Positions 27,054 to 64,000 of a DNA stretch of 64,000 nt are shown here, piece by piece. The translations under genes and the position numbers were made by a program. Origin of the DNA: Octopus sinensis (lineage: Eukaryota); assembly GCF_006345805.1 (NCBI RefSeq), contig NC_043026.1:3534001-3598000 (forward strand), in the 5' to 3' direction. The first letter of the stretch is position 1; each line of letters begins with the position of its first letter. Under the pieces are notes generated by a model that was not told the origin of the DNA, did not search any database, and worked only from the letters and a program-made list of their open reading frames with translations.

Positions 27054-27183
27054 AGTATCGGTGAAGGACAGAGTCTCCAACACTGAGGTGCTTCACAGAG
27101 CAGAAATGCCTGGAATCGAAGCCCTCATCATGAAGGCCCAGCTCCGGTGGATTGAACATGTAGTTCGAATGGACGATGCACGA
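27054..27183 (+). mobile_element. RTE LINE RT C-terminal fragment (duplicate at ~29112-29243)
   Basis: [39 protein letters not shown]. Confidence 0.85.
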
Positions 27184-27646: not shown

Positions 27647-27700
27647 CTGTTAAAAGATATAAAGAAGCAATAGATATACAATATATATTAGAAAAACCAC

Positions 27701-28037: not shown

Positions 28038-28637
28038 ATTAGAAAAACCACCTTTTATCAATTCAAAATGAACAGTTAAATTACACCATCTAAAAAATTA
28101 CGTATAATAGAAATATTAAACACACAAAAGCCGTTCGTTTCACTTCAACATTTAAGCTTAATTTGTCAATCAAATAAGTTTAATTAGTTTAATTAAACTT
28201 AAATATTGAAGTGAATCGAACGGCTTTTGTGTGTTTCTTAAATGGCTTACAAACACTTTCAACGCTGCAATTGTTTTCGTTTCAGCACACGATCTCAGAT
28301 CAAATCACTTGCTATGCAAGTACATCTCCGTAAATAGAATATTAAAATTAAAATTAAAATTAAAATAATATACCGATGATTAAGTAAATTGCAAAAAAAT
28401 AATAAAAACGTATATTACACTTTTATTATACGTTTTATTACGTTTTTATTATGTTTTTATCATTTTTTTGCAATTTACTTAATCATCGGTATATTATTGT
28501 TATTTTAATTTTAATATTTCTATTATATGTAATTTTCTAGATGGTGTAATTTAATTGTTCATTTTGAATTGATAAAAGGTGATTTTTCTAATTTATATAT
28601 ATAAATAGTGGTTTTGTCTCTAATATATATAATATAT

Positions 28638-28682
<45 letters not shown>

Positions 28683-29594
28683 TTTTGGGATTTGGTGTAA
28701 ATAACGGGCAGAGTCAAGACTATTGAAAAAGTTGCAAGACGCAACGATAATTTTAGGAAAATAAAAATAAGAAATAAGTGGAAATTTTATCGGTGAGTGT
28801 GTTACATTATTAGGCACAAAAAGAAAATGACTCTCCCCAGGCATAAGAGTATATATATAATACAAAACTTCGTTAAATACAAATCCGAAACCAAAAAAAA
28901 ACAAAAAAAAAACAAACACAAACATTACTAAAGAAAGAAAAAATGGAAAAAAGAGGTAAAAGAGGAAGAAAGAAAGAAGGAAAAAAGTAAAAACAGTAAT
29001 TCAACACCAAGTGCCCCAACTGGCCACACACCACAAGGTTATAGGTTATACGTACACACAAAGGAAACGTATACATGCAAATTTGCTTTATTGTGGTGTA
29101 TTTACATTAAGTATCGGTGAAGGACAGAGTCTCCAACACTGAGGTGCTTCACAGAGCAGAAATGCCTGGAATCGAAGCCCTCATCATGAAGGCCCAGCTC
29201 CGGTGGATTGAACATGTAGTTCGAATGGACGATGCACGATTCATGATTGTAAGGTCGTGAGTTCAATTCCCGGTGGCGCGTTGTGTCCTTGAGCAAGACA
29301 CTTTATTTCACATTGCTCCAATCCACTCAGCTGGCAAAATTTGAGTTGTACCTGTATTTCAAAGGGCCAGCCTTGTCACACACTGTGTCACGCTGAATCT
29401 CTCTGAGAACTATGTGAAGAGTACACGCGTCTGTGGAGTACTCAGCCACTTGCACGTTAATTTCACAAGCAAGCTGTTCCGTTGATCATATCAGCTGGGA
29501 CCCTCGTCGTTGCAACCGACGGAGTGCTCCTATGGGGGAAGGAATAGTAGATGTAGTAGCAGAACTTGATATAACATGTGATGAAGGGCCATAC

Positions 29595-29705
29595 CATTGT
29601 ATGTGTCATATGATAGCCATCAGGGTTTGTGACAGGAACAAACAACCAATCATATTTCTCCAATAAGTCCGTGACTTCCTTATCGACGTTCCGTTTAGTT
29701 GCAAA
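29595..29705 (-). CDS. Carboxypeptidase gene 1 exon, copy A (111 nt, phase 0-0): FATKRNVDKEVTDLLEKYDWLFVPVTNPDGYHMTHTM
   Basis: Same splice sites and NPDGY motif as copy B. Lies within the ~2.06 kb tandem duplication. Confidence 0.85.
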
Positions 29706-31101
29706 CTGTTAAAAGATATAAAGAAGCAATAGATATACAATATATATTAGAAAAACCACAAGAAGCGCTTCAAGGACAGTCTCAAAGTCTCTCTCAAAGA
29801 CTTCTCCATCGGCACAGAGACTTGGGAGACACTTGCTGCCGACCACTCATCCTGGCGCAGCGCAATCACCACAGGAGCAGGGACAGCCGAGGAGAGACGG
29901 ATTCAGTCAGCAGAACAGAAACGCCAGATGCGGAAAGCCAGAGCCACCTGCACCAATAGCGCAGCCCCTACCCACTTCTGCCCCACCTGTGGGAGGGGCT
30001 TTCTTGCCCGGTATTGGCCTCACCAGCCACCTCCGGTCTCATAGCAGCAATTCCACCAAATGATGTCAATGGTCATCTTCAAACCCGAAGGACGAACATT
30101 AGAAAAACCACCTTTTATCAATTCAAAATGAACAGTTAAATTACACCATCTAAAAAATTACGTATAATAGAAATATTAAACACACAAAAGCCGTTCGTTT
30201 CACTTCAACATTTAAGCTTAATTTGTCAATCAAATAAGTTTAATTAGTTTAATTAAACTTAAATATTGAAGTGAATCGAACGGCTTTTGTGTGTTTCTTA
30301 AATGGCTTACAAACACTTTCAACGCTGCAATTGTTTTCGTTTCAGCACACGATCTCAGATCAAATCACTTGCTATGCAAGTACATCTCCGTAAATAGAAA
30401 TATTAAAATTAAAATTAAAATTAAAATAATATACCGATGATTAAGTAAATTGCAAAAAAATAATAAAAACGTATATTACACTTTTATTATACGTTTTATT
30501 ACGTTTTTATTATGTTTTTATCATTTTTTTGCAATTTACTTAATCATCGGTATATTATTGTTATTTTAATTTTAATATTTCTATTATATGTAATTTTCTA
30601 GATGGTGTAATTTAATTGTTCATTTTGAATTGATAAAAGGTGATTTTTCTAATTTATATATATAATAGTGGTTTTGTCTCTAATATAATATAATATATAT
30701 TATATATATATATATATTATATATATATATATATAATATATATATATATATTATATTGTGTGAAATTTGATTTAGCATTTCTAAATTGAATCCTGTAAGT
30801 TAGGATTAATATTCCATCAAATAATTATTATATATATATATATTATATATATATATATACATATATACACAGGGTGTGTAAGGTATTTGAGGACATACCT
30901 TTCTTGGGACATTGCTGCATTTTTTCCTAATTCCAAACTTACAGGGAAAAATTCAATTTAGCAATTCTAAATCAAATTTCACAATATATAATATATGTAT
31001 ATAATTAAGAGAAATAACCTCTATTAAGTAAATCAATTGATAGTGAAAGATATAATCTATATTAAATCATATAGAAAAAAATTTTAATATTTTGTAATAA
31101 A

Positions 31102-31500
31102 TCTTTATATATAAAAGTGAAGTTGTGTGTCTGTCTCCTACGATTTAGATTCCTAACTACTCCCACATTTTGCAGTGCAGTTTAACCAAAACCGGGTATC
31201 TTATAGTCGTGATTAATATCGAGCCCTTCTGGGTATTAGCGCATGTCTACGATGAGTCTACAATTTTAAAAATAATTTACCATCATTTTTTCCATTTTAA
31301 TGCATTTTTTCGCTATTATATAAGGGAAGTAACTCTCTAAAAATGTCTACGATGAGTCAATGATTTAAAAAAAAATTTACCATCATTTTTTTTTTCCATT
31401 TTTGATGCATTTTTTTGCTATTTTTTGGCTATAACTCTCTAAAAATGCTTATATAGTTATTTCCCTTACAAACCCGAGCAACGCCGGGCGATACTGCTAG
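31102..31500 (+). mobile_element. Non-autonomous Helitron-like element (also 48706-49101 and 55714-56111; related element ~53041-53430; 3' end on minus strand near 8192-8240)
   Basis: A|TC 5' end, subterminal hairpin CCCG-agcaacgc-CGGG, 3' CTAG|T. Confidence 0.7.
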
Positions 31501-31899
31501 TATATTATAATATATTGAGACAAAGAATTTATTTAAATAACAGGGCTGTAAGGCACACACACACACACACACACACACATACAAATATGCTGATGTGTAT
31601 ATATATATATATCAGTTTCAGGTATAATTCTTGTTCAGTTCAGTTCGTCTTTTTTTCATGGTACCCACAAACCAAATGTGGTTTTTTTTCACCTCCAATA
31701 ACATAAAGCAGTTGCCATATTTAATACCAAGTGCAAAACTGCTTGGTAAAATTGGCTGTAATGGATAAAAATACATACATACATACATACATACATACAT
31801 ACGTATATATATATATATATATATATGTATATGTATATATGTATGTATTTTTGTATAAATATATATATATATATATCTTTCTCTCTTTTCTCTTTTACT

Positions 31900-32539
31900 T
31901 GTTTCAGCACCGCCTTTAGCCGAACAAATCGACCCCAGGACTTATTCTTTGTAAGCCTAGTACTTATTCTATCGGTCTCTTTTGCCGAACCGCTAAGTAA
32001 CGGGAATATAAACACAACAGCATCGGGGATCAAGCGATTTGGGGTGGGGGCAAACACAGACGCTCAAACATACACACACATACATACATATATATATATA
32101 TATATACATATATACGACGATCTTCTTTCAGTTTTCATCGGCCAAATCCACTCAAAAGGCTTTGGTCAGCCTGAGGCTATAGTAGAAGACACTTGCCCAA
32201 GGTGCCACACAGTGGAACTGAACCCGGGACCATGTGGTTCATAAGCAAGCTACTTACCACACAGCCACTCCACTACATAAAACTATTTGAGAAATGGAAA
32301 CAGAATGATATGCTTATGGAATCTCTTTACTCTTTTACTCTTTTACTTGTTTCAGTCATTTGACTGCGGCCATGCTGGAGCACCGCCTTTAATCGAGCAA
32401 CTCGACCCCGGGACTTATTCTTTTGTAAGCCCAGTACTTATTCTATCGGTCTCTTTTGCCGAACCGCTAAGTAACGGGGACATAAACACACCAGCATCGG
32501 TTGCCAAGCAATGACAGGGGGACAAACACAGACACACAA

Positions 32540-32570
<31 letters not shown>

Positions 32571-32930
32571 CGACAGGCTTCTTTCAGTTTCCGTCTACCA
32601 AATCCACTCACAAGGCTTCGGTCGGCCCGAGGCTATAGCAGAAGACACTTGCCCAAGATGATACGCAGTGGGACTGAACCCGGAACCATGTGGTTGGTTA
32701 GCAAGCTACTTACCACACAGCCACTCCTGCGCCTATATATATATATACATATATACGATGGGCTTCTTTCAGTTTCCGTCTACCAAATCCACTCACAAGG
32801 CTTCGGTCGGCCCGGGGCTATAGCAGAAGACACTTGCCCAAGATGCCACACAGTGGGACTGAACCCGGAACCATGTGGTTGGTTAGCAAGCTACTTACCA
32901 CACAGCCACTCCGGCGCCTATATGATTGAC
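31900..32930 (-). mobile_element. Stack of family A SINE copies
   Basis: Repeated head, body and tail motifs, reverse-complemented. Confidence 0.8.
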
Positions 32931-33018
32931 TAAAAATCCACATAGGAAACGTCCCAAAATTGTTGTAAACCAATGGGTGAAGCAAAGAATAAGAAAAATT
33001 TAAGGAGGTATATCTTAC

Positions 33019-33117
33019 ACTTTCAATGACTTTTAGGGTGGAAGCAATTGCGATCCATTCACGGCTGTGCATTCCTGCTTCAACGATGATTGTGTCCTTT
33101 CCAGGGCCAACGGAAAA
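33019..33117 (-). CDS. Carboxypeptidase gene 1 exon (99 nt, phase 0-0): FSVGPGKDTIIVEAGMHSREWIAIASTLKVIES
   Basis: Acceptor tttcaaacag, donor GTAAGA. G.HSREW carries Zn ligands His69 and Glu72 plus Arg71. Confidence 0.95.
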
Positions 33118-35293
33118 CTGTTTGAAATTGAAAATACAGATTAGCAAAGGTTTTACAGCATGGCAGACTGGGTTACATTCTTTTGGAGCTGTGGTGTGTT
33201 GGTGCTTCTGTTTGGTGGTAATGTGTTGTAGAGTAATGTGGAAACGGTGGTTTGGTGTCATCTTGCAGTGTTGCAGTATGGTATGGTGGTATGGTATGGT
33301 GACGTGGTGGTGTACTGTGCTGTTGTGAAGGCAGCTAGCTGGCAGAACCGTTAGCACACCAGGCGAAATGCTTAGGAGTATTTCATCTGCCGCTGTTACG
33401 TTCTGAGTTCAAATTCCGCCGAGGTCGACATTGCCTTTCATCCTTTCGGGGTCAATAAATTAAGTACCAGTTACGCACTGGGGTCGATATAAATAGGTAT
33501 TTCATCTGCCGCTACGTTCTGAGTTCAAATTCCACCGAGGTTAACTTTGCCTTTCATCCTTTCGGGGTCGATTAAATAAGTACCAGTTAAGTACTGGGGT
33601 CGATATAATCGGCTTAATCCGTTTGTCTGTCCTTGTTTGTCCCCTCTGTGTTTAGCCCCTTGTGGGTAGTAAAGAAATAGGTATTTCGTCTGTCGTTACG
33701 TTCTGAGTTCAAATTCCGCCGAAGTCGACTTTGCCTTTCATCCTTTCGACTTAATCCGTTTGTCTGTCCTTGTTTGTCCCCTCTGTGTGTAGCCCCTTGT
33801 GGGCAGTGAAGAAATTGGTATACAGTGTTGTTGTGTAGAAGAACTGATATAAGATTGTTATACTGTAGTTTTGGGGTATGAACATGCACAAGTAGGTGGA
33901 CTGAAAAGTTTATAACTTGAGTATGAAGGGGTGAGACTAGAACTGGGAAACCTTGTATTCATTAATTTTATCCCTTATCAATAACTACATAGTTTCTTTC
34001 TGAGCAATCACACACAAACACACACACACATTTGTACATATATATATTAGAGACCTCCTTCGGTCACGACACTGACCATGGGATTGCACCTAGAAAGTTA
34101 CCCTCCCAGGCACAAGTCTGGGCAAGGTTGTTTATGGAAGACCAGCAGTCGCCCATGCATACCGGCCTCTGCTCTCCACGCCACCAGTGTTATCCAAGGG
34201 AAAGGCAAAGTGCTTTTCTAGTTGCTGTTGTTTGTTTGTTTGTTTGTTTGTTTGTTGAGTGAAGCGGTCTTCGTCCCTTGGGAGAAGTCCGAAACGAGGT
34301 CTTTTGCTATTTGTAAGACCCGCAGAAGAGAAATCAGATCAACCCCCGACACCAAGAGCATTGACGGATGGATGAATGCGCATCCAGGCTCAGCGGTTGC
34401 GTAGGAAGTCGGGGACAAGAAACAGGATGAAAGAGTGAGAGAAAGTTGGGGTGAAAGAGTACAACAGGGGTCGCCACCACCCTCTGCCGGAGCCTCGTGG
34501 AGCCTTAGGTGTTTTTGCTCAATAAACACATACAACGCCTGATCTGGGGATCGAAACCGTGATCCTCCGACCGCGAGTCCGCTGCACTAACCACTGGGCC
34601 ATTGCACCTCCACACACACATATATATAAGAAAATAAAGGAGCAACAATTAACCCTTAGAAGTTGATTCTTAGTATTAAAAGCTTTAGGTGTTTTTGCAC
34701 AATAAACACACACAACGTCTGGTCTGGGAATCAAAACCGCGATCCTCCGACCACGAGTCCACTGGGCCATTACGCCTCCACTGCTCTGCTATTGTTGTCT
34801 GTAAAAAGTCAACACAGTTGTCCTTGTGCTTTGATAAAATTCATTAAATGTTTGTGGTTATTCAGTTACCCATTTTCATTCACCACCACAGACCCATTTT
34901 CATTCACCAGCTCAACCATTCACCACCACAGACCAGCCCACAACCTTCAGACTGCGACGTGGTTATCTCTGCTTAACAATTTGAAAGTGGGGCTTCTACT
35001 GTCTACTCCAATGAACTGTGACAGATATTTTATCTTGAGATTAGAGATAAATACAAAGCTGAATTGAATGAATGAATGAATATATATATATAAATATGTG
35101 TGTATGTATGTACAGGTATGAAAATATATATGCATGTACGTATATGTATATATATATATAAATATGTGTGTATGTATGTATGTACACGTATGAAAATATA
35201 TAAGCATGTATGTATATGTATGTACATATATATACATTTATATATGCGTGCATGTATATGTATACAAATGTATGTTATGTATATGTGTGTATG

Positions 35294-35331
<38 letters not shown>

Positions 35332-35516
35332 TATATAATTATAAATATTAGGGAATAAATCCAAATTTACAGGGAAAAAAATCAGATTTAGGATTAAATC
35401 CAATTTTATAGTAAAATATTATAAAATATTATTAGAGACAAAACCACTATTTTGCAAAACAAACAAGGAAAGACTTAATCAATACATAAAATTTTAATAA
35501 ATAGTCAAAAAAACCG

Positions 35517-35559
35517 CCACTACAATTGTTTCTTGTCTTGATCGACAATCTTCAGGTGG
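35517..35559 (-). ncRNA. Minimal type I hammerhead ribozyme (host pre-mRNA strand)
   Basis: CCAC-CTGAAGA-TTGTC gatcaa GACAA-GAAAC AATT GTA-GTGG: canonical core, 5-bp stem II, palindromic CAATTG stem III, GUA triplet. Confidence 0.8.
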
Positions 35560-35614
35560 ACTTCCAATAAGTCAGTTTCAAATTATGAATTTTGGAAACT
35601 GACTTATTGGAAGT

Positions 35615-35656
35615 CCACCTGAAGATTGTCGATCAAGACAAGAAACAATGTAGTGG
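35615..35656 (+). ncRNA. Minimal type I hammerhead ribozyme (mirror copy)
   Basis: CCAC-CTGAAGA-TTGTC gatcaa GACAA-GAAAC AAT GTA-GTGG. Confidence 0.75.
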
Positions 35657-35777
35657 CGGTTTTTTGACTATTTATTAAAATTTTATGTATTGATTAAGTC
35701 TTTCCTTGTTGTTTTGCAAAATAGTGGTTTTGTCACTATAATATTTTATATATATATACATATATATATATATTATG

Positions 35778-35817
<40 letters not shown>

Positions 35818-36452
35818 CATATGTATATATATATTGGCATACATACATTATATGAAAATACATATAAGGTCTTGTATTGTTTATCGTAGTAATGTTCTAC
35901 ATACATTGATTTAGCTGAGTTCAAAAGTTATATATGTCAAAAGTTATATATATATATGCCAGTGTGTCATTGATAATGTTGATAAAATTATTAGGGATCA
36001 AATTTGTAATATAGTAAATTATGTACAATAGATATAGATATACAGATATAGGCATGGCTATGTGGTAAGGAGTTTGCTTTCCGACCACATACATCCAGGT
36101 TCAGTCCCACTGTATGGTACCTTTGGAAAGTGTCTTCTCCTATTGTCTCAGGTTAACCAATGCCTTGTGAATGGATTTAATAGATGGAAACTGAAAGAAG
36201 CCCATTGCATGTGTTTATATATATATATACATATATATATACTCTTTTACTCTTTTACTTGTTTCAGTCATTTGACTGCGGCCATGCTGGAGCACTGCCT
36301 TTAGTCGAGCAAATTGCCCCTGGGACTTATTCTTTGTAAGCCCAGTACTTATTCTATCGGTCTCTTTTGCCGAACCGCTAAGTGACGGGGACGTAAACAC
36401 ACCAGCAATGCTAGGGGGACAAACACAGACACACAAACACACACATACACAT

Positions 36453-36483
<31 letters not shown>

Positions 36484-36899
36484 ATATATATATATATATA
36501 TACATATATACGACAGGCTTCTTTCAGTTTCTGTCTACCAAATCCACTCACAAGGCATTGGTCGACCCGGGGCTATAGCAGAAGACAGTTGCCCAAGATG
36601 CCACGCAGTGGGACTGAACCCAGAACCATATGGTTGGTTAGCAAGCTACTTACCACACAGCCACTCCTGCATATATATATATATATATATATAGAAATAT
36701 TAAAATAACTCTTATTTTTATAAGAATGCCATATTAGTATGGCGATAACTATTATATATATATATATATTATATATATATATATATATAATATATATATA
36801 TTAATATATATAGACAAACGATTAATATACCTCAACTTTAGAATAAAAGAAATACACACACAAATATTACATTCCAAAGAATCCATTACTAATCAGCCC

Positions 36900-37260
36900 C
36901 AATCACAGCTATAATCCATAACATGCCAACTTCAAGTCATACAACACCTCACTACTTTCATCCATTCATATTCTCCCTTCTCTGTTTTTTTCTTCTCCTT
37001 CCTCTTCTTCTTCATCATCATCATTATCATCATCATCGTCGTCGTCATCATCACCACCATCATCATCATCATCTTCTTCTTCTCCTTCTCCTTCTTCTTC
37101 TTCTTCTTCTTCTTCATCATCATCATCAACATCGTCATCTTCTTCTTCTTCTTCTTCTTCTTCTTCTTCTTCTCCTTCTTCTCTTCTTCTTCTTCTTCTT
37201 CTCCACCTTCTACCTCTTACTTTATCACTAATGCTTTTAGTATAACACCTACGCAAATTC
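36900..37260. repeat. (CTT)n/(CAT)n trinucleotide low-complexity tract
   Basis: Direct reading. Confidence 0.85.
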
Positions 37261-37675
37261 CATAAACAAACCTTTCAATAGAAATATTCTCCTGAATTGA
37301 ACTGCAACTGCTAGCTGCCACTGACCATTCAAAATACGACCATCAAGGCACTCCCAAATTTTTCCACCCCTTCTCCTCATCAACATTCTTCTTCTTCTAC
37401 CCTACCAAGAATTCACAACTGCCTGGAACACACAAGTGCAAACAAGGGAGACAGAGAAAGGCAGAATGCCACTTATATTTGAACACTATACAAAAATTCC
37501 TTTAAAAAAACTTTTCTTTTAATTTTTCTAAATTTAATTATTTAATCGTTACAGTTGAAAAGGTCTCAAAATGACCGAAACCGGTACTGAAATGTTCTTT
37601 ATAAAATTATTTTAGCATTTTCTATCTTGACTTGTTTTTTCATATATAAAATCGTGTGTTCCTTTTCACCCTTAT

Positions 37676-37716
<41 letters not shown>

Positions 37717-37718
37717 TT

Positions 37719-37786
<68 letters not shown>

Positions 37787-37799
37787 TCTTTTATCTTTT

Positions 37800-37982
37800 A
37801 TTTGTTTCAGTGATTTGACTGTGGCCATGCTGGAGCACTGCCTTCACTCAAACAAATTGACCCTTATACTTTGTAAGCCTGGTAGTTATTTATTCTATCA
37901 GTCTCTTTTACCGAACTGCTAAGTTATGGGGATGTAAATACACCAACATCGGTTGTCAAGCAACGGTAGGGGGCAAACACAG

Positions 37983-38054
<72 letters not shown>

Positions 38055-39280
38055 GCTTCTTTCAGTTTCTGTCTACCAAATCCACTCACAAGGCTCTAGT
38101 CGGCCCGAGACTATAGTAGAAGACACTTGCCCAAGATGCCATGCAATGGGACTGAACCTGGAACCATGTGGTTGGGAAGCAAGTGTCTTACTACACAGAC
38201 ATGCCTGCATCTATATAAATGAATATATATATATATATATCATCATCATCATTTAACGTCTGTTTTCCATGCTGGCATGGGTTGGACGGTTTGACTGATA
38301 ACTTATAAGCTAGCGGGGCTGCACCAGGTTTCAATTTGATTTCAATCTAACATCAACCACTTTACAATTATGTATTGGGTCCTTTTTTTCATGCCACCAG
38401 CAAGCATTGGTGTGGTTGCCAAGTGTGGAGGCGCAATGGCCCAGTGGTTAGGGCAGCGGACTCGCGGTCGTAGGATCGCGGTTTCAATTCCCAGACCGGA
38501 TGTTGTGAGTGTTTATTGAGCGAAAATACCTAAAGCTCCACGAGGCTCCGGCAGGGGATGGTGGTGATCCCTGCTGTACTCTTTCACCACAACTTTCTCT
38601 CACTCTTACTTCCTGTTTCTGTTGTACCTGTATTTCAAAGAGCAGGCCTTGTCACTCTCTGTGTCACGCTGAATAGCCCCGAGAACTACGTTAAGGGTAC
38701 ACGTGTCTGTGGAGTGCTCAGCCACTTACAGGTTAATTTCACGAGCAGGCTGTTCCGTTGATTCGGATCAACCGGAACCCTCGTCGTCGTAACCGACGGA
38801 GTGCTTCCCTCCTCCCTGGTTGCCAAGTAACTTGCATGACAGGAAAGAAGAAAATAGAAAACCGAATAAAAGGAAAAGATGGAAAAGTTCAAAACATTTT
38901 CCATTAAATGGGTGAATATTTGAGAGGGTGGAGAGGTTGCTTAGTGCAAGAGATGAGCAGAAGTGTCCTGAAATAGAGAAAATGTGTAGCTATCTGGCTG
39001 GGGTTTAGATGAGGGAGAGTGAGAATATCCGAAAGGAAAATCAGAAAATAGTCAAATTCAAATTCCGATGAACACTTTACTCTTTTACTCTCTTTTACTT
39101 GTTTCAGTCATTTGACTGTGGCCATGCTGGAGCACCGCCTTTAATCGAGCAACCCGACCCTGAGACTTATTCTATCGGTCTCTTTTGCCGAACCGCTAAG
39201 TAATGGGGACATAAACACACCCAGCATCGGTTGTCAAGCAATGCTAAGTGGGGGGGGGGGGACAAACACAGATACACAAG

Positions 39281-39369
<89 letters not shown>

Positions 39370-39550
39370 TTATATACATATATACGACAGGCTTCTTTCA
39401 GTTTCTGTCTACCAAATCCACTCACAAGGCATTGGTCGGCCCGGGGCTATAACAGAAGACACTTGCCCAAGATGCCACGCGGTGGGATTGAACCCGGAAC
39501 CATGTGGTTGGTTAGCAAGCTACTTACCACACAGCCACTCCTGCGCCTAT
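37800..39550. mobile_element. SINE cluster (family A on minus, family B on plus at ~38427-38810)
   Basis: Head ggaggcgcaatggcccagtggttagggcagcgg with B box gtttcaattcc, plus family A motifs. Confidence 0.75.
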
Positions 39551-39614
39551 TCTAAACAAACAAATGTAAACAAACAAATGAAGTTTGCTTTAGAAGCGTT
39601 GAGATGTATTAGAA

Positions 39615-40299
39615 AGTTAAAGTTAAGTTAAGTTAATTTTTTGGCCCAAAAAGCAAAAAGCAAGGCCATGTAGGGGGACATGGAGTTATGTACAGGGTGG
39701 TGTTCATGCAAAGAATTCAGGCCATTTCTGGTCAAGAGAGACTTTGAACCGAGCGGTCGTCGGCATCTTCACTATCTCGTCTGGCAGCTTATTCCACGGA
39801 TCTGCAACCTGGACAGAGAAAGCCCCACTCCTTCGATTGAGATGAAATCGTTGCAGATAGAGCTTTCCGGAGTGACCCCGCAGCCGATGCTCTGGAGCAG
39901 GAGTGAAGAACAGCTCTTTCGAGAGGTTACACTTTCCGCTTATGATGTTGTGAGCAAGAATGAGATCACCACGGCCACGGCGTTTTTCTAGAGAATAAAG
40001 GTCGAGCGTCTTCAGCCTTTCTTCATTTAGGACGAATGTTGCTGTAATTTAGCCCCAGGAGACATCATCTCCAGCTGGCTTTAGGACGTGTTGTATAGCC
40101 AGCTGGAGATGATGTCTCCTGGAGCTAAATTACAGCAACATTCGTCCTAAACCAGGACTACCATGTTATGTTGGCAAAAATCTTTACTCCTATTGAATTT
40201 TGTTTATATTTCTGCTTATGATGTGAGCAAGAATGAGATCACCACGGCGTCATCGTTTTTCTAGAGAATAAAGGTCGAGCGTCTTCAGCCTTTCTTCAT
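39615..40299 (-). mobile_element. CR1-type LINE 3' end with (TTAAC)n tail, interrupted by a hairpin element (40027-40150) and with an ~86-bp internal duplication
   Basis: EERLKTLDLYSLEKRRGRGDLILAHNI...RLRGHSGKL...FSVQVADPWNKLP...FKVSLD. Segments 39938-40026 and 40214-40299 are near-identical. Confidence 0.85.
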
Positions 40300-40406
40300 A
40301 AGACCAAGAACCATGTGGGTCTAAAAGAAGTGATAGGAGGTCACCATCAACATAGTATTGAAAGAAACAAGACAGTACTGTTACTTGAAGGAAAAACTAG
40401 GCTTAC

Positions 40407-40505
40407 CTTGATGGCGTAGAGGTCTCGGTTTTCGTAAGATTTTCCATAATGTATCAGTCCCACATGAGAATATAACTGTGCATAACTCTTAATCAGATCA
40501 ACAAT
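40407..40505 (-). CDS. Carboxypeptidase gene 1 exon (99 nt, phase 0-0): IVDLIKSYAQLYSHVGLIHYGKSYENRDLYAIK
   Basis: Acceptor tttgctgtag, donor GTAAGC. G.SYE.R.L..IK motif of the mature M14A N-terminus. Not in the ORF track. Confidence 0.92.
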
Positions 40506-40958
40506 CTACAGCAAAGAGAATAAAAGAAAACATGAGAATAAGAAGGAAATGATGTTGGAGGATTTACGGAGATGTACTTGCATAGCGAGTGACTTGATCT
40601 GAGATCGTGTGCTGAAATGAAAACAATTGCAGCGTGGAAGGTGTTTGTAAGCCATTTAAGAAACACACAAAAGCCATTCGATTCACTTCAACATTTAAGT
40701 TTAATTTGTCAAAATATTTTTGTTGCTTTAAGACCGCGACCTGTTCACTGACAAAAATCCGTGCTGCATCTGTATATATATACATACATATATATACATA
40801 TATATATATTTATATATATATATATATATATATAGTGGTTTTATCTCTAATTTAATATAATATAATATAATATATTTATACTATAAAATTGGATTTAATC
40901 CTAAATCTAATTTTTCCCTGTAAGTTTGGATTTATTCCCTAATATTATTATAAATATA

Positions 40959-40992
<34 letters not shown>

Positions 40993-41241
40993 CAGCGTGG
41001 AAGGTGTTTGTAAGCCATTTAAGAAACACACAAAAGCCGTTCGATTCACTTCAACATTTAAGTTTAATTTGTCAAAATATTTTCGTCACTTTAAGAGTAG
41101 TAAAGAAATAGGAAAGAGGAGGTGAAGGGAAAGAGAGAGAGGTGAGTTCAAGACACAAGGTAAATATGAGAGACAGAATAGTGAAAAGTGAACTTGATCT
41201 GATCTCTTATACAAGGTGGTATTTATTGCTGATGAACTTAC

Positions 41242-41320
41242 CCTATCTATGGGGGCATAGGTACTTGTCACTGCCTTCTCTGAATACAATACAGACTTGG
41301 GTTTCTCCTCCGCAATTTTA
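41242..41320 (-). CDS. Carboxypeptidase gene 1 exon (79 nt, phase 2-0), pro-segment linker and mature N-terminus: KIAEEKPKSVLYSEKAVTSTYAPIDR
   Basis: Acceptor ctacttgcag, donor GTAAGT. Joins in frame to IVDLIK, resembling the Y..LD.I motif at the start of the mature enzyme. Confidence 0.75.
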
Positions 41321-41419
41321 CTGCAAGTAGGAAATTACAAAGAAGGATTTATACATAACAGAATTACTGGATACTCTAGAAGTATAAAACTGGCATATAG
41401 CTTGTTTCCTAATATACAT

Positions 41420-41597
41420 AATAGCAGGAGTGGCTGTGTGGTAAGTAGCTTGCTAACCAATCACATGGCTCCAGGTTCAGTCCCACTGCGTGGCATCTTG
41501 GGCAAGTGTCTTCTGCTATAGCAACGGGACGACCAAAGCCTTGTGAGTGGATTTGGTAGACGGAAACTGAAAGAAGCTCATCGTATATATGTATATA

Positions 41598-41659
<62 letters not shown>

Positions 41660-42140
41660 TGTGTTTGTTTGTGTGTCTGTGTTTGATAGAATAAGTACTA
41701 GGCTTACAAAGACTAAGTCCTGGGGGTCGATTTGCTCGACTAAAAAGGCGGTGCTCCAGCATGGCCGCAGTCAAATGACTGAAACAAGTAAAAGAGACCG
41801 ATAGAATAAGTACTAGGCTTACAAAGACTAAGTCCTGGGGGTCGATTTGCTCGACTAAAAGGCGAGGCGGTGCTCCAGCATGGCCGCAAGTCAAATGACT
41901 GAAACAAGTAAAAGAGACCGATAGAATAAGTACTAGGCTTACAAAGACAAGTCTCTGGGGGTCGATTTGACTGACTAAAGGCGGTGCTCCAGCATGGCCA
42001 CAGTCAAATGACTGAAACAAGTAAAAGAGACCGATAGAATAAGTACTAGGCTTACAAAGAATAAGTCTTGGGGGGTCGATTTGCTCGACTAAAAGCGGGT
42101 GGTGCTCCAGCATGGCCACAGTCAAATGACTGAAACAAGT
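41420..42140 (+). mobile_element. Family A SINE with its tail segment (~110 bp) repeated four times
   Basis: gatagaataagtactaggcttacaaaga...gactgaaacaagtaaaagag recurs four times. Confidence 0.85.
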
Positions 42141-42359
42141 AAAAGAGTAAATAATTAAGAAAAAATGAAACTAAAATGGTTCCGAAATCAATTTTTTTTC
42201 CTCTACCATTTAAGTACTTTTCATCTTGGTTTCTAGTTCCATCCAATATTGAAATGGGGACACACAGACATGCGCATACCACACCACACACACACACACA
42301 CACATTTTTGTCATTGTCTTGTATGTTTGTTAGCATTTCACCACTGGCATTTCACCATG

Positions 42360-42405
<46 letters not shown>

Positions 42406-42829
42406 GCGTGTGTGCGTGTGCATGTGTGTGTGTGTGTGTGCGTGTGTGTGCGTGCATGTGTGTGCATGTGTGTGTGTGCGTGTGTATGTGTGCGTGCGTG
42501 TGTGTGTGTGTGTGTGGTGAATAGCTGCATATGCGTACACACACAAACATAAATATCTTTATACATAACGAGCTTCTTTCAGTTTCCTTCCACGAAATCC
42601 ATTCACAAGGCTTTGATTGGTCCAGTCCGATAGAAGAAGACACTTGACCAAAGTGACATGAAAATACATTGAAAAGTACCTTAGGAATTAGAACCCAGGT
42701 TTGAAATTTCCCCAAGACACCTGATGAAGGCTGGAGGGTATATCAGCTGAAATGTTGTGTTAACAACAAACAAGATGAGGACAACTATCCGTCAAATGGA
42801 AATAATTCCTCATCTCTTAAATATAGAAC

Positions 42830-42858
42830 TGGAATAATAATAATAATGATAATAGTGA

Positions 42859-42919
<61 letters not shown>

Positions 42920-43077
42920 TTATAATAATAATAATAATAATAATATTAATAATAATAATAATAATATTAATAATACTAATAATATTAATAATAATAATAA
43001 TAATATAATAATAATAATAATAATAATAATTAATAATAATAATAATAATAATTATAATATTATAATATAAAATAATC

Positions 43078-43117
<40 letters not shown>

Positions 43118-43133
43118 TAATAATAATTAATAA

Positions 43134-43164
<31 letters not shown>

Positions 43165-43222
43165 TTATAATAATAATAATAATAATTATAATATTAATAA
43201 TAATCTAATAAATAATAATAAT

Positions 43223-43292
<70 letters not shown>

Positions 43293-43540
43293 TAATAATA
43301 TAAAAAAGTACCTTAGGAATGAGAACTCAGGTTTGAAATATCCCCAAGACACCTGATGAAGGCTGGAAGGTATATCAGCCGAAATGTTGTGTTAACAACA
43401 AACAAAATGAGGAGAAATATCCATCAAAAGTTAAAAAAATGTGCATAATTCCTCATCTCTTAAATATAGAACCACTTTCTCTGTTGTTCTTACAGTTTCA
43501 CTGCATTCAAACTTCACTTTCTTGTCTGTAAATCACCGTC

Positions 43541-43592
<52 letters not shown>

Positions 43593-43595
43593 CCC

Positions 43596-43627
<32 letters not shown>

Positions 43628-43706
43628 CCATCATTATCATCATCATCGCAATTATCATCACCATCATCATCACCGTCATCATCAAAGTCATCATCCTCAT
43701 CCTCAC

Positions 43707-43744
<38 letters not shown>

Positions 43745-43754
43745 CCATCATTAC

Positions 43755-43798
<44 letters not shown>

Positions 43799-44080
43799 CC
43801 ACCACCACCATCATCATCATTACCCTCATCATCATCATCCTCGTCATCACCATCATCATCACCCTTGTCATCACCATCATCATAATCATCATCATCATCA
43901 TCATCACCAACACCACCATCATCATCATTACCCTCATCATCATCACCTCGTCATCATCATCATCATCATCATCATCACCACCACCACCACCACCACCACC
44001 ATCATCATCATTACCCTCATCATCATCATCCTCATCACCACCATCATCATCACCATCATCATCATCACCATCATCATCTA
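42830..44080. repeat. Long (AAT)n tract (42830-43300) and (CAT)n tract (43540-44080)
   Basis: Direct reading. Confidence 0.9.
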
Positions 44081-44315
44081 TTTATGTTCACACACACACA
44101 CACACAGATATATATGCATAGAAGAAGAAAGAGGATGGAAAGGATGAGAGAAGAGGAAGATGAAGAGAAAAGAGGAACACAGCTGAATAAAAACAACAGA
44201 AGGAAAAAAGGAAAAGATGAATAACAGCCATACCATCAACAAAACCACATCAACAACAGCAACAATAATAAGCAACTTAGAAGAACTAAGTGGCATAAAA
44301 CGTGCATGGACATAC

Positions 44316-44397
44316 CTCCTGAGGATTATTCTGGTTGATAGACTTCAGAGTCCCTAATCCAGATTCTGTTTGAGGGACCACCTTCAACAGACGGTAA
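44316..44397 (-). CDS. Carboxypeptidase gene 1 pro-domain exon (82 nt, phase 2-0): YRLLKVVPQTESGLGTLKSINQNNPQE
   Basis: Acceptor ccttctttag, donor GTATGT. Resembles the Y..L.V.P.T..L..L motif of the M14A propeptide. Length and phases match my recollection of exon 2 of vertebrate CPA/CPB genes. Confidence 0.75.
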
Positions 44398-60970: not shown

Positions 60971-61032
60971 AACAGAAGCAACATTTTATGTTTCAGCATA
61001 AATTCATTTCTTTATTAAATAAAACCTTTTTT

Positions 61033-61220
61033 TTATTTCTCTAAGTGATCAGAAAAAGTTTTGAGGGTAGTGTAAAGTTCCAGGTAGTTTGCCTCTATCT
61101 CGGATTCTGGTACAATGAAACCCTTGCCGTTGAAAGACGGTGGGCCCATCTTCAAATTGTAAGCGTACTTGATGCCCATTACCATTTTGGCCCAGTCGAA
61201 GGAGCTCCCTGTGAAAGGAT
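61033..61220 (-). CDS. M14A carboxypeptidase gene 2, last coding exon (188 nt): PFTGSSFDWAKMVMGIKYAYNLKMGPPSFNGKGFIVPESEIEANYLELYTTLKTFSDHLEK*; Lys at Glu270 position
   Basis: Acceptor ttcgtcacag. Same length and phase as 9203-9390, with a colinear protein match. No stop or frameshift. Upstream exons lie beyond the window. Confidence 0.9.
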
Positions 61221-61516
61221 CTGTGACGAATGAAAAAGGGATAGAAAAAAATTCAACGTAAGGGTGTGTGTGATAAGTAAAGAAATTAGTTTTTCGATAT
61301 AGGCGCAGGAGTGGCTGTGTGGTAAGTAGCTTGCTAACCAGCCACATGGTTCGGTGTCAGTCCCACTGCGTGGCATCTTGGGCAAGTGTCCTTCTGCTAT
61401 AGCCCCGGGCCGACCAATGCCTTGTGAGTGGATTTTGGTAGACGGAAACTGAAAGAAGCCTGTCGTATATATGTATATTATAATTATATATATATATAAA
61501 TATATATATATATATC

Positions 61517-61550
<34 letters not shown>

Positions 61551-61558
<8 letters not shown>

Positions 61559-63851
61559 GATAAAACGGTAAAGATAACAAAAGAAAGAAGAGACCTCAAT
61601 ATTATGTAAATAGAGGAAATTATCTATACAATATGTTACATTACTCGGTAGTCAAGATAAACTCTGAGTTTCAGATGCCGAAGTGGAAATCCACAACACC
61701 ATCTCTTCGGTTATCTGGCTATTTGAAAACGTTATGAAAAAATCCGTTAAAAATGAAGGGAAATTACTCTGTTATAACTCTGCTTTGCCTGCGTACTTAT
61801 ACATCGCTCGCATTTTTCGTCATAAAAATTATATAAAATACATAAAAAATATAAAAATATATAAAATCTTCTTGGGACATAACACAGAAAGCATGTTCTA
61901 TCCGTTTTCTTTAGAGGACCAAAAACGTAACAGAAATTTAGTCACATGTGGGCATGATCCGAAAAAGCTCTGTCCTTGTATTTAGACATGGTGGTAGGGT
62001 CTAAGCTGCTTTTCCAGAAAGCCATCTCTCCATGTCGCATAAACCGCACCTTCCGCTGCCGTTAGTATAGGGCTTACATCTGGCCAAAAACTTCCATTGT
62101 ATGTTATAATCGACACCTTTATCTCTTAAAGACCAAATATGATTGGATAATTGTGTCGCTTTTCTTTTGTTCCAGTGCCTAAAGCTCAAAGTGTGGTTAT
62201 TGAACCTGGCCTTGAAATTACCCTCTGTCAGGCCCACGTATTTCTTCGTCGAAACGGTGGGTCTTTAGTGGTTATAGAGTTTACGGTAGCTTCATATATG
62301 ATGGTCTTGGACAGCAAGCTCCATTTAGCGGGCACAATTCTTTATTCCTGCATGAACAGCTGTTTTCTTCTTGTGTTTTTTGTATGTTATGATTGATTAT
62401 GTTTTTAAAATTGGTAGTTGAACTAAAACTAATTTTTAAATGTGTCTATTGAAGAGTTTCCTATAAGCATGGTTAACTGGAAAATGTCTATCTATCAGTG
62501 CTAGGAAATATTTACCTATATTGAAGGCCACCTCGGGTGAGTAAGGGGCGTAAACCAGATGACCTTCCTATTTCTATTATTCCTTTACCTTATTGTTGGG
62601 CTGGTGATAGGTGTATATTTTATTTTTTCGCTAAAACCACTATCTTTTAAAGCTTTATTTAAACTGGGGAACGCTATTGAAGATGTCCTCATTAGATGAG
62701 AGACTAGAAATCCTCTTACTAATATTTTTAACTAAATTTTTGAATACTATAGGGGGATGGCATGAACCTACATAAAATAACTTAGTCTATCATTGGCTTC
62801 CTATAAGGCTTATAAATATTATTATTAGATCTAAGGAAACGTCTAAGAATTGACCAACCGTCAGGTTAGTGTCTATAGTTTATACTAAGTCCGAAGTGTT
62901 TCATTAACTGGATAATATCCTTCCTAAAACGATCTTGTGCTGGTCCATTTGTATTAGCTGTTATATATAGGTAAATATTTCCTAGCACTGATAGATAGAC
63001 ATTTTCCAGTTAACCCTGCTTATAGGAAACTCTTCAATAGACACAATTTAAAAATTAGTTTTAGTTCAACTACCAATTTTAAAAACATAATCAATCATAA
63101 CATACAAAAAACACAAGAAGAAACAGCTGTTCATGCAGAATAAAGAATTGTCCCGCTAAATGGAGCTTGCATGTCCAAGACCATCATATATGAAGCTACC
63201 GTAAACTCTATAACCACTAAAGACACCGTTTCGACGAGAAATACGTGGGCCTGACAGAGGTAATTTCAAGGCCAGGTTCAATAACCACACTTTGAGCTTT
63301 AGGCACTGGAACAAAAGAAAAGCGACACAATTATCCAATCATATTTGGTCTTAAGAGATAAAGGTGTCGATTATAACATACAATGGAAGTTTTTGGCCAG
63401 ATGTAAGCCCTATACTAACGGCAGCGGAAGGTGCGGTTTATGCGACATGGAGAGATGGCTTATCTGGAAAAGCGCTTAGACCCTACACATGTCTAAATAC
63501 AAGGACAGAGCTTTTCGGATCATGCCACATGTGACTAAATTTCTGTTACGTTTTTGGTCCCCTAAAGAAAACGGATAGAACATGCTTTCTGTGTTATGTC
63601 CCAAGAGATTTTATATATTTTTATATATTTTTATGTATTTTTATATAATTTTTATGACGAAAAATGCGAGCGATGTATAAGTACGCAGGCAAAGCAGAGT
63701 TATAACAGAGTAATTTCCCTTCATTTTTAACGGTATTTTTCATAACGTTTTCAAATAGCCAGATAACCGAAGAGATGGTGTTGTGGATTTCCACTTCGGC
63801 ATCTGAAACTCAGAGTTTTATCTTGACTACCGAGTAATGTAACATATGTAT

Positions 63852-63856
<5 letters not shown>
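61551..63856 (-). mobile_element. 5'-truncated Penelope-like retroelement (RT thumb, Cys linker, GIY-YIG) with an inverted copy of its 3' ~900 bp
   Basis: Minus strand ~62965 to 62000, frameshifted: FLDVSLDL...YKPYRKP...HPP...RISSLSSN...RKVIWF...IGKYFLALIDRHFP...CSCRNKELCPLNGAC...IIY...YVGLTEGNFKARFNNH...CGLC. Arms 61621-62521 and 62966-63856 are reverse complements. Flanked by (TA)n. Confidence 0.92.
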
Positions 63857-63905
<49 letters not shown>

Positions 63906-64000
63906 ATATGTTTGTGTGTCTGTGTTTGTCCCCCCAAACAACATACATTACATACATACATATACATGTATGATGTATGTATGTATGTATGTATGTATGT

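What the first reader, a model, noticed from the sequence alone, without database searches (positions are those of the whole stretch)
61033..61220. Carboxypeptidase paralogue with catalytic Glu270 replaced by Lys (candidate pseudo-enzyme)
Seen: the exon is open, has correct splice signals and is the same length (188 nt) as gene 1's last exon. YAYAFELRP has become YAYNLKMGP (AAG at 61150-61152), and A250 and residue 255 are both Phe. Known: Glu270 is the general base of M14 enzymes, and its loss abolishes catalysis. From memory, fungal Ecm14 is a conserved M14 pseudopeptidase with the same E-to-K change. Inference: an intact frame plus several coordinated pocket changes suggests a maintained non-catalytic protein (binding, scaffold or secreted gland component) next to an active sister gene.
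Basis: partly seen in the sequence, partly recalled or inferred. Interest (0 to 1): 0.72.

Follow-up and report, generated by a model that had tools for sequence, protein, structure and literature searches.

The report
Octopus catalytically dead carboxypeptidase paralogue
The flagged stretch is the last exon of an already annotated octopus salivary-gland carboxypeptidase gene that has lost its catalytic glutamate (now lysine) and two other essential residues, yet is kept intact in several octopus species, so it is most likely a conserved non-catalytic "pseudo-enzyme" next to a sister gene that keeps all its catalytic residues.

Summary
Window 61220-61033 (minus strand) is an open 188-nt terminal exon with a CAG acceptor, a TAA stop and an AATAAA signal. 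It reads YAYNLKMGP where gene 1 reads YAYAFELRP, and AAG at 61152-61150 is Lys at position 270.

The window is Octopus sinensis CM016888.1:3534001-3598000. The exon is exon 11 of XP_029653519.2, "LOW QUALITY PROTEIN: zinc carboxypeptidase". The ten upstream exons lie beyond 64000 and all have AG/GT borders.

Lys270 is not an error. The exon is base-for-base identical in O. vulgaris. The O. cyanea orthologue CARB-Oct-1, named like gland cDNAs, also has Lys270. Both orthologues share further changes: E72D, R127K, A250F, G253S, R272G. About 150 other M14 proteins have E72, R127 and E270 without real exception.

The gene evolves about as slowly as gene 1: 78% versus 81-82% orthologue identity. It has 0 non-synonymous changes where about 5.6 are expected.

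One caveat: exon 6 is two bases short in the O. sinensis assembly. O. vulgaris has a 410-residue product annotated at this gene's exon 1.

Verdict: a maintained secreted M14A pseudopeptidase, convergent with fungal Ecm14. It is a new member of a known kind.

The parts
61033..61220 (-). Last coding exon (exon 11) of gene 2 = XP_029653519.2. It holds the last 2 bases of the Tyr248 codon, 61 codons and the TAA stop (61035-61033).
   Evidence: sequence and translation. (C-terminus of P0081 is identical). (L005 41965-42152 equals this exon, and the L005 tail is identical to the reverse complement of window 51033-64000).
61150..61152 (-). AAG, Lys at the position of the general base Glu270 (bovine CPA numbering).
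   Evidence: The same codon is present in O. vulgaris. Lys is also present in O. cyanea CARB-Oct-1.
61198..61215 (-). Pocket segment F250-T-G-S253-S254-F255. It carries A250F and G253S (shared with O. cyanea) and Phe255 (Tyr in O. cyanea and in gene 1).
   Evidence: Phe at 250 occurs in 0 of 56 other M14A proteins.
61144..61146 (-). GGC, Gly replacing the highly conserved Arg272. Shared with O. cyanea.
   Evidence: Arg occurs in 48 of 56 other proteins.
61221..61245 (-). 3' splice site of intron 10: polypyrimidine tract plus CAG.
   Evidence: Conserved in O. vulgaris.
61011..61016 (-). AATAAA polyadenylation-type signal, 16 nt after the stop.
   Evidence: Identical in O. vulgaris (printout).
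61246..64000 (-). 3' part of intron 10 of gene 2. It carries SINE-like repeats and a long inverted repeat (arms 61659-62129 and 63351-63818). Exon 10 lies about 2.7 kb beyond the window end.
9203..9390 (-). Last exon of gene 1 (XP_029653617.2), 188 nt, used as comparator. YAYAFELRP with GAA Glu270 at 9322-9320.
9203..44396 (-). Gene 1, the sister that keeps all catalytic residues. Exons seen: 44396-44313, 41322-41239, 40505-40398, 33117-33019, 27646-27536 (duplicate copy 29708-29595), 25938-25849, 16117-15920, 13012-12929, 9390-9203. H69, E72, R127, N144, R145, H196, Y248 and E270 are all present. The signal-peptide exon and the second prodomain exon were not found in the window.

Best explanation
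The exon is the 3' end of a real 11-exon gene, gene 2 (XP_029653519.2, CM016888.1:3595033-3627184, minus strand). The gene encodes a secreted procarboxypeptidase-fold protein with a signal peptide, a Propep_M14 prodomain and a Peptidase_M14 domain.

Origin. Gene 2 arose by tandem duplication of the octopod posterior-salivary-gland "CARB" carboxypeptidase gene (gene 1). It then passed through a burst of change that removed the catalytic machinery:
- the general base Glu270 became Lys;
- Arg127, which polarises the scissile carbonyl, became Lys;
- the zinc ligand Glu72 became Asp;
- the S1' pocket was filled in (A250F, G253S, G207A).

Since then the gene has been held by purifying selection at about the same rate as its neighbour, which keeps all catalytic residues.

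What is shown: the gene structure, the substitutions, their sharing across O. sinensis, O. vulgaris and O. cyanea, the fold, and the signature of constraint.

What is inferred: that the protein cannot hydrolyse peptides. This follows from established M14 enzymology and from the Ecm14 precedent.

More tentatively inferred: that it works by binding rather than cutting in the gland secretion. Two candidate roles are (a) a decoy or partner for proteins that dock on the carboxypeptidase funnel, such as proteinaceous inhibitors from prey, and (b) a scaffold for co-secreted protease zymogens.
For: Identity of the gene: P0081 ends with exactly this exon. Locus L005 overlaps the window base for base. 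All 11 exons have AG/GT borders.

Family and fold:
- Pfam Peptidase_M14 scores 254.7 bits and Propep_M14 52.5 bits for the O. cyanea orthologue.
- The best solved relative is human proCPA4, E = 1.4e-58.
- The AlphaFold model has pLDDT 92.9 and TM 0.90 to human proCPA2, PDB 1aye.

Catalytic residues: E72D, R127K and E270K are shared by O. sinensis and O. cyanea. H69, N144, R145, H196 and Y248 are kept. E72, R127 and E270 are 56/56 in other M14A proteins, and 150/150, 150/150 and 145 of about 147 in a larger set.

Constraint:
- Gene 2 orthologues are 78.2% identical over 409 aa. Gene 1 orthologues are 81-82% identical.
- At gene 1's synonymous divergence, neutral drift would give about 54% identity and about 8 stops per 316 codons.
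- Between O. sinensis and O. vulgaris, exons 10 and 11 have 2 synonymous and 0 non-synonymous differences. Flanking DNA differs at 2.6%, so P(0 non-synonymous) = 0.0037.
- In the NJ tree the gene 2 stem is 0.33 against 0.12 for gene 1, with similar crown branches.

Intact copies elsewhere: O. cyanea CARB-Oct-1 is an uninterrupted 411-aa sequence. In O. vulgaris a 410-residue product with both Pfam domains is annotated starting at the orthologous exon 1.

Gland context: the database names CARB-Oct-1 and Carb-Abd-1. Carboxypeptidase is a recognised posterior-salivary-gland component (PMC5554399).

Precedent: Ecm14 has E270K and no detectable activity (PMC7706225, PMC11266112).
Against: - In the O. 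sinensis reference, exon 6 is 97 nt instead of 99. The frame breaks just after ...HGRDWI. NCBI labels the protein LOW QUALITY, and its model is garbled over about 29 residues.
- No activity, metal content, transcript or peptide data were examined here.
- The rate comparison uses different species pairs for the two genes.
- The O. vulgaris copy of exons 10-11 used for the constraint test sits next to a 100-N scaffold gap. It lies about 230 kb, in record coordinates, from that species' gene 2 exon 1, so it may be a second or haplotypic copy.
- No orthologue was found in O. bimaculoides within reach of the tools.
- The specific binding role is speculative. The retention of N144, R145 and Y248 is not statistically informative.
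Confidence: 0.7

Rival explanations
1. In O. sinensis (or in the O. vulgaris/sinensis complex) gene 2 is a recently dead unitary pseudogene. On this reading the exon is a still-pristine relic of a gene that was a functional pseudo-enzyme until recently.
For: There is a 2-nt shortfall in exon 6, in a non-homopolymer context, leading to a premature stop in the genomic frame. The protein carries the RefSeq LOW QUALITY label. The O. vulgaris annotation around exons 10-11 is a chimera with gene 1.
Against: - Only one defect was found in 11 exons, and all splice sites are intact.
- There are zero non-synonymous changes and reduced divergence in exons 10-11 between the two species.
- A 410-residue product is annotated in O. 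vulgaris starting at the orthologous exon 1.
- The same assemblies show clear artefacts nearby: N gaps, about 100% identical duplicated blocks, and missing gene 1 exons.
Confidence: 0.18
2. The protein is still a hydrolase with an altered mechanism or specificity. For example, Lys270 (free or carboxylated) could act as the base, Asp72 could still hold the metal, and the pocket could be narrowed for small C-terminal residues.
For: H69, H196, N144, R145, Y248 and Y198 are retained, and E72D is conservative. The prodomain and its flexible linker are retained, as expected for something that is still activated by cleavage.
Against: Three catalytic positions that never vary in the other 150 M14 proteins examined here changed together. 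Ecm14, with the same E270K, has no detectable activity (PMC7706225, PMC11266112). No M14 enzyme with Lys at 270 is known to me.
Confidence: 0.07
3. The Lys codon or the exon is a sequencing or assembly artefact, or a chance open frame in a decayed duplicate fragment.
For: None beyond the generally imperfect assembly.
Against: The sequence is identical at 188 of 188 bases in an independent assembly of another species. Lys is also present in the O. cyanea protein. The exon belongs to a complete 11-exon gene.
Confidence: 0.01

Closest known systems
Ecm14 (fungal M14A pseudopeptidase; McDonald et al. 2020, PMC7706225)
   Same: Both are A/B-type M14 proteins with a prodomain. Both have the general base Glu270 replaced by Lys. 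Both keep the zinc histidines. In both, the substitution is conserved among orthologues. The non-catalytic function is unknown in both.
   Different: Ecm14 is defined by N144D plus E270K and also has R145H. The octopus protein keeps N144 and R145, and instead has R127K, E72D and a filled S1' pocket. It nests inside octopod CARB genes, not fungal ones, so the E270K change is convergent.
Vertebrate M14 pseudopeptidases AEBP1/ACLP, CPXM1, CPXM2 and CPD domain III (review PMC11266112)
   Same: All are secreted or extracellular M14 folds that lost catalytic residues and act through binding.
   Different: Those belong to the N/E (regulatory) subfamily. They have discoidin or transthyretin-like domains, Tyr at 270 or changes at 145 and 196, and no prodomain. 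The octopus protein is a plain A/B-type zymogen.
Coleoid posterior-salivary-gland carboxypeptidases (CARB-SepT-1, Carb-Abd-1; gene 1 = XP_029653617.2)
   Same: Gene 2 is their closest relative (52-55% identity). It has the same 11-exon architecture, with identical lengths and phases for the last two exons, sits in the same tandem cluster, and has the same signal peptide and prodomain.
   Different: These relatives keep all catalytic residues. Gene 2 and CARB-Oct-1 do not.
Predicted pseudoenzymes among duplicated vertebrate CPO and CPA/B genes (Sci Rep 2023, PMC9925722)
   Same: In both cases tandem duplication of an A/B-type gene was followed by substitution of strictly conserved active-site residues.
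   Different: Those predictions are mostly lineage-specific recent duplicates with weak purifying selection. The octopus gene is shared by distant Octopus species and evolves as slowly as its sister gene, which keeps all catalytic residues.

Membership tests
MEROPS M14, subfamily A (procarboxypeptidase A/B type), by descent and fold | Peptidase_M14 domain | tested here: met
   254.7 bits for P0079 and 189.8 bits for P0081 (cutoff 21.6). The exon alone scores 20.1 bits, just under the cutoff.
MEROPS M14, subfamily A (procarboxypeptidase A/B type), by descent and fold | N-terminal activation prodomain (Propep_M14) after a signal peptide | tested here: met
   Propep_M14 scores 52.5 and 56.1 bits. 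The signal peptide MKVLIAFLFCLSLAES is read directly from exon 1. No predictor was run.
MEROPS M14, subfamily A (procarboxypeptidase A/B type), by descent and fold | Zymogen fold of proCPA/proCPB | tested here: met
   pLDDT 92.9, and TM 0.90 with rmsd 1.9 Å to PDB 1aye. The top 16 matches are A/B-type (pro)carboxypeptidases, nearly all zymogens (proCPA, proCPB, TAFI).
Active metallocarboxypeptidase | General base Glu270 | tested here: not met
   Lys in O. sinensis, O. vulgaris and O. cyanea.
Active metallocarboxypeptidase | Arg127 (polarises the scissile carbonyl and stabilises the intermediate) | tested here: not met
   Lys in both orthologues. Arg is 56/56 and 150/150 elsewhere.
Active metallocarboxypeptidase | Zinc ligands His69, Glu72 and His196 | tested here: inconclusive
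   His69 and His196 are kept. Glu72 is Asp (HGRDW) in O. cyanea and in the genomic frame of O. sinensis exon 6. Whether Asp still binds zinc cannot be told from sequence.
Active metallocarboxypeptidase | C-terminal carboxylate anchor Asn144, Arg145 and Tyr248 | tested here: met
   The Tyr248 codon is split T|AT across exons 10 and 11.
Pseudoenzyme (maintained inactive homologue) | Inactivating substitutions shared by orthologues, and an ORF under purifying selection | tested here: met
   Caveat: the exon 6 frame break in the O. sinensis assembly.
Pseudoenzyme (maintained inactive homologue) | Demonstrated lack of catalysis, and expression as protein | not testable with these tools
   Only the database name CARB-Oct-1 and reviews saying carboxypeptidases occur in the gland.
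Ecm14 | N144D together with E270K; fungal clade (PMC7706225) | tested here: not met
   E270K is present but N144 and R145 are retained. The protein groups with octopod CARB genes.
Decaying pseudogene | Frame disruptions, lost splice sites, neutral substitution pattern | tested here: inconclusive
   One 2-nt shortfall in exon 6. No lost splice site. The substitution pattern is non-neutral.

The most novel reading that the evidence does not exclude
An animal A/B-type M14 pseudopeptidase has been kept since before the divergence of Octopus species as a secreted posterior-salivary-gland (venom) component that works by binding. It might act as a decoy for prey-derived inhibitors that plug the carboxypeptidase funnel, or as a scaffold for co-secreted protease zymogens. 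In the O. vulgaris/sinensis lineage it would be better conserved than its neighbour that keeps the catalytic residues, and that neighbour shows defects in both assemblies.
Probability: 0.2. Interest if true: 0.65.

Novelty: new member of a known kind. Interest (0 to 1): 0.5.

Why it matters
M14 pseudopeptidases are few. The review read here (PMC11266112) lists four in vertebrates and fungal Ecm14, and the function of Ecm14, the only characterised A/B-type one, is still unknown.

An independent, convergent E270K pseudopeptidase would offer a second natural experiment on what a dead carboxypeptidase funnel is good for. This one sits in tandem with its parent gene and belongs to a family recorded from an accessible secretory gland.

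It also matters for annotation and venomics. The protein is currently named "zinc carboxypeptidase" or "CARB" and counted as an enzyme. The RefSeq model hides its zinc-site region behind a wrong-frame stretch. The O. vulgaris model of the neighbouring gene is a chimera that borrows an exon from it.

Tried and rejected
1. Word-index search with the 61-aa exon found nothing. This was a false negative, because the annotated protein P0081 contains the exon exactly.

2. The exhaustive representative-library search gave 37 hits, all with Glu at 270. Gene 2 orthologues were not listed as separate representatives, presumably because of the 50% clustering.

3. Exact look-ups that failed: Carb-Abd-1 and the 104-aa genomic ORF spanning the exon.

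4. The Argonauta hians locus holds only one gene, of the gene 3 type. XP_029653563.1 lies 10 Mb away.

5. The O. bimaculoides gene 1 locus has no gene 2 exon, and no alignable flank, within 10 kb upstream.

6. Pairwise dN/dS between the two paralogous last exons was 0.46. I rejected it as uninformative. It averages a constrained branch and a possibly neutral one.

7. tblastn found no exon 9 upstream of exon 10 in O. vulgaris L004. This first suggested a truncated gene. It is explained by a 100-N scaffold gap and a satellite array 1.5 kb upstream.

8. No upstream gene 2 exon lies inside the window. Exon 10 lies about 2.7 kb past position 64000.

9. Literature searches found no prior description of a cephalopod M14 pseudoenzyme or of these accessions. 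Ruder et al. 2013 is not held, so I cannot exclude that it comments on the active site.

Full report
**What is at the coordinates**

The finding lies on the minus strand. Reading 61220 down to 61033 gives a polypyrimidine tract and CAG, then AT (the end of a split codon). After that come 61 codons, PFTGSSFDWAKMVMGIKYAYNLKMGPPSFNGKGFIVPESEIEANYLELYTTLKTFSDHLEK, and TAA. An AATAAA follows 16 nt after the stop.

The exon is 188 nt, exactly like the last exon of gene 1. That exon is at 9390-9203 and reads ...KYAYAFELRPDPHSMRGF.... The two exons align without gaps, with 127/188 bases and 29/61 residues identical. AAG at 61152-61150 faces GAA at 9322-9320.

**Where the window comes from and what the genes are**

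A concatenate of gene 1 exons retrieved XP_029653617.2, "zinc carboxypeptidase, partial [Octopus sinensis]". Its locus places the window at CM016888.1:3534001-3598000 (base-for-base identity).

A profile search then returned XP_029653519.2, [quoted passage not shown], 409 aa. Its C-terminus is exactly the exon in question. An earlier word-index search with the exon alone had wrongly found nothing.

The gene spans L005 10001-42152, which is CM016888.1:3595033-3627184, and has 11 coding exons of 62, 82, 137, 76, 99, 97, 111, 97, 197, 85 and 188 nt. All have AG/GT borders. Only exon 11 is inside the window. Exon 10 lies about 2.7 kb beyond position 64000.

The chromosome carries a head-to-tail cluster: gene 3 (XP_029653549.1, "carboxypeptidase A2-like"), gene 2, gene 1, and then a diacylglycerol-kinase gene on the other strand.

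**Orthologues**

In O. vulgaris (OX597841.1, locus L004) exon 11 is identical at all 188 bases. Exon 10 differs at two synonymous sites.

UniProt R4FJ79, "CARB-Oct-1" of Octopus cyanea, is an uninterrupted 411-aa orthologue, 78.2% identical. It reads ...YAYTLKLGPP..., so it has Lys at 270 as well. The CARB/Carb names belong, from my memory, to posterior venom-gland cDNAs of Ruder et al. 2013. That paper is not held. Reviews in the library confirm only that carboxypeptidase is a recognised component of the cephalopod posterior salivary gland.

**Active site**

I used a bovine CPA sequence for numbering. It reproduces H69, E72, R127, N144, R145, H196, Y248 and E270.

- Gene 1 and its relatives (O. 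bimaculoides, Abdopus, two squids, gene 3) have the full catalytic set.
- Gene 2 of O. sinensis and CARB-Oct-1 share E72D (HGRDW), R127K (DRL[F/W]KKN), G207A, A250F, G253S, F269L, E270K and R272G.
- Both keep H69, R71, N144, R145, H196, Y198 and Y248.
- The Tyr248 codon is split, T from exon 10 and AT from exon 11.

In 56 other M14A proteins from molluscs, annelids, arthropods, vertebrates and fungi, E72, R127 and E270 are invariant, and Phe never occurs at 250. The same holds in a set of 155 proteins, apart from misaligned or aberrant sequences. The solved-structure search shows the same three replacements against human proCPA4.

**Family and fold**

Pfam finds Peptidase_M14 plus Propep_M14. 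The AlphaFold model of CARB-Oct-1 is confident (pLDDT 92.9, pTM 0.92). It superposes on procarboxypeptidase zymogens at TM about 0.9. The only weak block is the prodomain-enzyme linker, where zymogens are cleaved.

**Is it maintained?**

Four independent lines say yes.

1. Gene 2 orthologues (O. sinensis and O. cyanea) are 78% identical. Gene 1 orthologues (O. sinensis against O. bimaculoides or Abdopus) are 81-82% identical. For gene 1 the O. sinensis to O. bimaculoides comparison gives dS 0.28, dN 0.105 and omega 0.38. Neutral drift at that divergence would leave about 54% identity and about 8 stops per 316 codons. This assumes that O. cyanea is at least as distant from O. sinensis as O. bimaculoides is, which I take from memory and from the near-trichotomy.
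2. The derived active-site states are shared by the two orthologues, so they were fixed before the species split and have been kept since.
3. Between O. sinensis and O. vulgaris, flanking non-coding DNA differs at 2.6% (87/3339). Exons 10 and 11 show 2 synonymous and 0 non-synonymous differences over 215 non-synonymous sites. That gives P = 0.0037 under neutrality, and P = 0.0075 for zero changes in exon 11 alone. Gene 1 shows 6 non-synonymous and 3 synonymous differences in 319 codons over the same interval.
4. In a neighbour-joining tree the gene 2 pair is sister to the gene 1 group. Its stem is 0.33 against 0.12 for gene 1, and the crown branches are similar. This is the pattern of a burst of change after duplication followed by renewed constraint.

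**The caveat**

In the O. sinensis assembly exon 6 is 97 nt, where gene 1 has 99 nt and O. cyanea has the corresponding 33 residues. The frame is lost between ...EAGIHGRDWI and IASTLKVIEH, and the genomic frame runs into a stop. I kept the two pieces apart, with an X between them, and put nothing back.

The RefSeq model instead reads exons 5-6 in another frame. This garbles about 29 residues and hides His69 and Asp72.

The defect is the only one in the gene. It sits in an assembly that shows obvious artefacts within the same 64 kb. In O. vulgaris a 410-residue product with both Pfam domains is annotated starting at the orthologous exon 1. I therefore think an assembly error or a private allele is more likely than a fixed pseudogene, but only reads can decide.

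The O. vulgaris exons 10-11 that I used lie beside a 100-N gap, about 230 kb away in record coordinates from that exon 1. They may be a second or haplotypic copy.

**Mechanism**

Established M14 enzymology makes Glu270 the general base, Arg127 the polariser of the scissile carbonyl, and His69, Glu72 and His196 the zinc ligands. Ecm14, with E270K alone among these, has no detectable activity (PMC7706225, PMC11266112).

With E270K, R127K and E72D together, plus bulkier residues at 207, 250 and 253 lining the S1' pocket, catalysis is very unlikely. That is an inference. The retained signal peptide, prodomain, funnel architecture and carboxylate-anchoring residues suggest a secreted, proteolytically matured protein that acts by binding.

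Which partner it binds is unknown. I rank a decoy or partner for funnel-docking proteins, or a scaffold for co-secreted zymogens, above any residual hydrolase activity.

**Comparison and novelty**

By descent and fold it is a member of M14 subfamily A. It fails the tests for an active metallocarboxypeptidase. It is not Ecm14, because N144 and R145 are retained and it nests among octopod genes. It does repeat Ecm14's E270K convergently.

I found no paper in the held library describing a cephalopod M14 pseudoenzyme or these accessions. The sequences themselves are public and are named as enzymes.

I therefore class it as a new member of a known kind (M14 pseudopeptidases), of moderate interest.

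Noticed in passing
window 41604-41790 and 44313-44396; L004 31956-32019 and 43354-43491: Gene 1, the sister that keeps its catalytic residues, is itself incomplete. In the O. sinensis window its signal-peptide exon and its second prodomain exon were not found. About 2.2 kb present in O. vulgaris is missing between window 41790 and 41604. In O. vulgaris, exon 1 of gene 1 has one extra base compared with O. bimaculoides gene 1 and with gene 2, which breaks the frame after MKVF. Gene 1 also shows 6 non-synonymous and 3 synonymous differences between the two species.
   Followed up: partly
L005 22971-25392 (outside the window): The RefSeq model XP_029653519.2 reads the end of exon 5 and most of exon 6 in a wrong frame to get round the 2-nt shortfall. 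This produces about 29 spurious residues (GNLMKGETFTPSSFLPALERSPLSLKQEYMAAIGS) in place of GKSHEGRNLYAIKFSTGPGKKSIIVEAGIHGRDWI.
   Followed up: yes
L004 10001-10085 joined to L004 43459 onward: The O. vulgaris model CAI9743232.1 is a chimera. Its first 28 residues are gene 2 exon 10 (starting at that exon's ATG). They are spliced into the middle of gene 1's prodomain exon, skipping gene 2 exon 11.
   Followed up: partly
window 26589-30665: A roughly 2.06-kb tandem duplication in which most segments are 100% identical (one is 95%). It contains a whole 111-nt exon of gene 1, with copies at 27646-27536 and 29708-29595. O. vulgaris has a single copy, so this is probably an assembly artefact or a very recent duplication.
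   Followed up: partly
window 46033-51834 versus 53824-57841; N run 58501-58600: A block of about 6 kb between the two genes is present twice, next to a 100-N gap. Both copies match one O. vulgaris segment. This suggests haplotypic duplication in the assembly.
   Followed up: no
window 44934-47211 and 53824-54193: A 46-bp minisatellite with about 50 copies at 93% match lies in the region upstream of gene 1's prodomain exon. It is repeated in the duplicated block.
   Followed up: no
window 21713-25755: A 234-bp tandem array with about 17 copies at 95% match fills an intron of gene 1. Further arrays lie at 18445-20558 (384 bp) and 6183-8191.
   Followed up: no
window 61659-62129 and 63351-63818: A long inverted repeat (arms 94-95% complementary, about 1.2 kb apart) lies in gene 2's last intron. 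That intron is 5.5 kb in O. sinensis and 3.8 kb in O. vulgaris. It is probably a foldback-type transposable element or two inverted repeat copies.
   Followed up: partly
window 60547-60959 and about 9080-9150: Both paralogous last exons are followed within about 80-100 nt by a (GAT)n/(ATC)n-rich microsatellite on the coding strand. The duplication unit therefore seems to have included the 3' flank.
   Followed up: no
L005 1-2860; L007: A third tandem paralogue lies about 7 kb upstream of gene 2. It is XP_029653549.1 in O. sinensis and CAI9743228.1 in O. vulgaris, named "carboxypeptidase A2-like". It has the full catalytic set and is the closest relative of the Argonauta hians gene.
   Followed up: partly
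window 61280-61460: A SINE-like element (ggcgcaggagtggctgtgtggtaagtagcttgc...) sits 60-240 nt upstream of the exon's acceptor site. Copies recur many times in L004 and L005.
   Followed up: no
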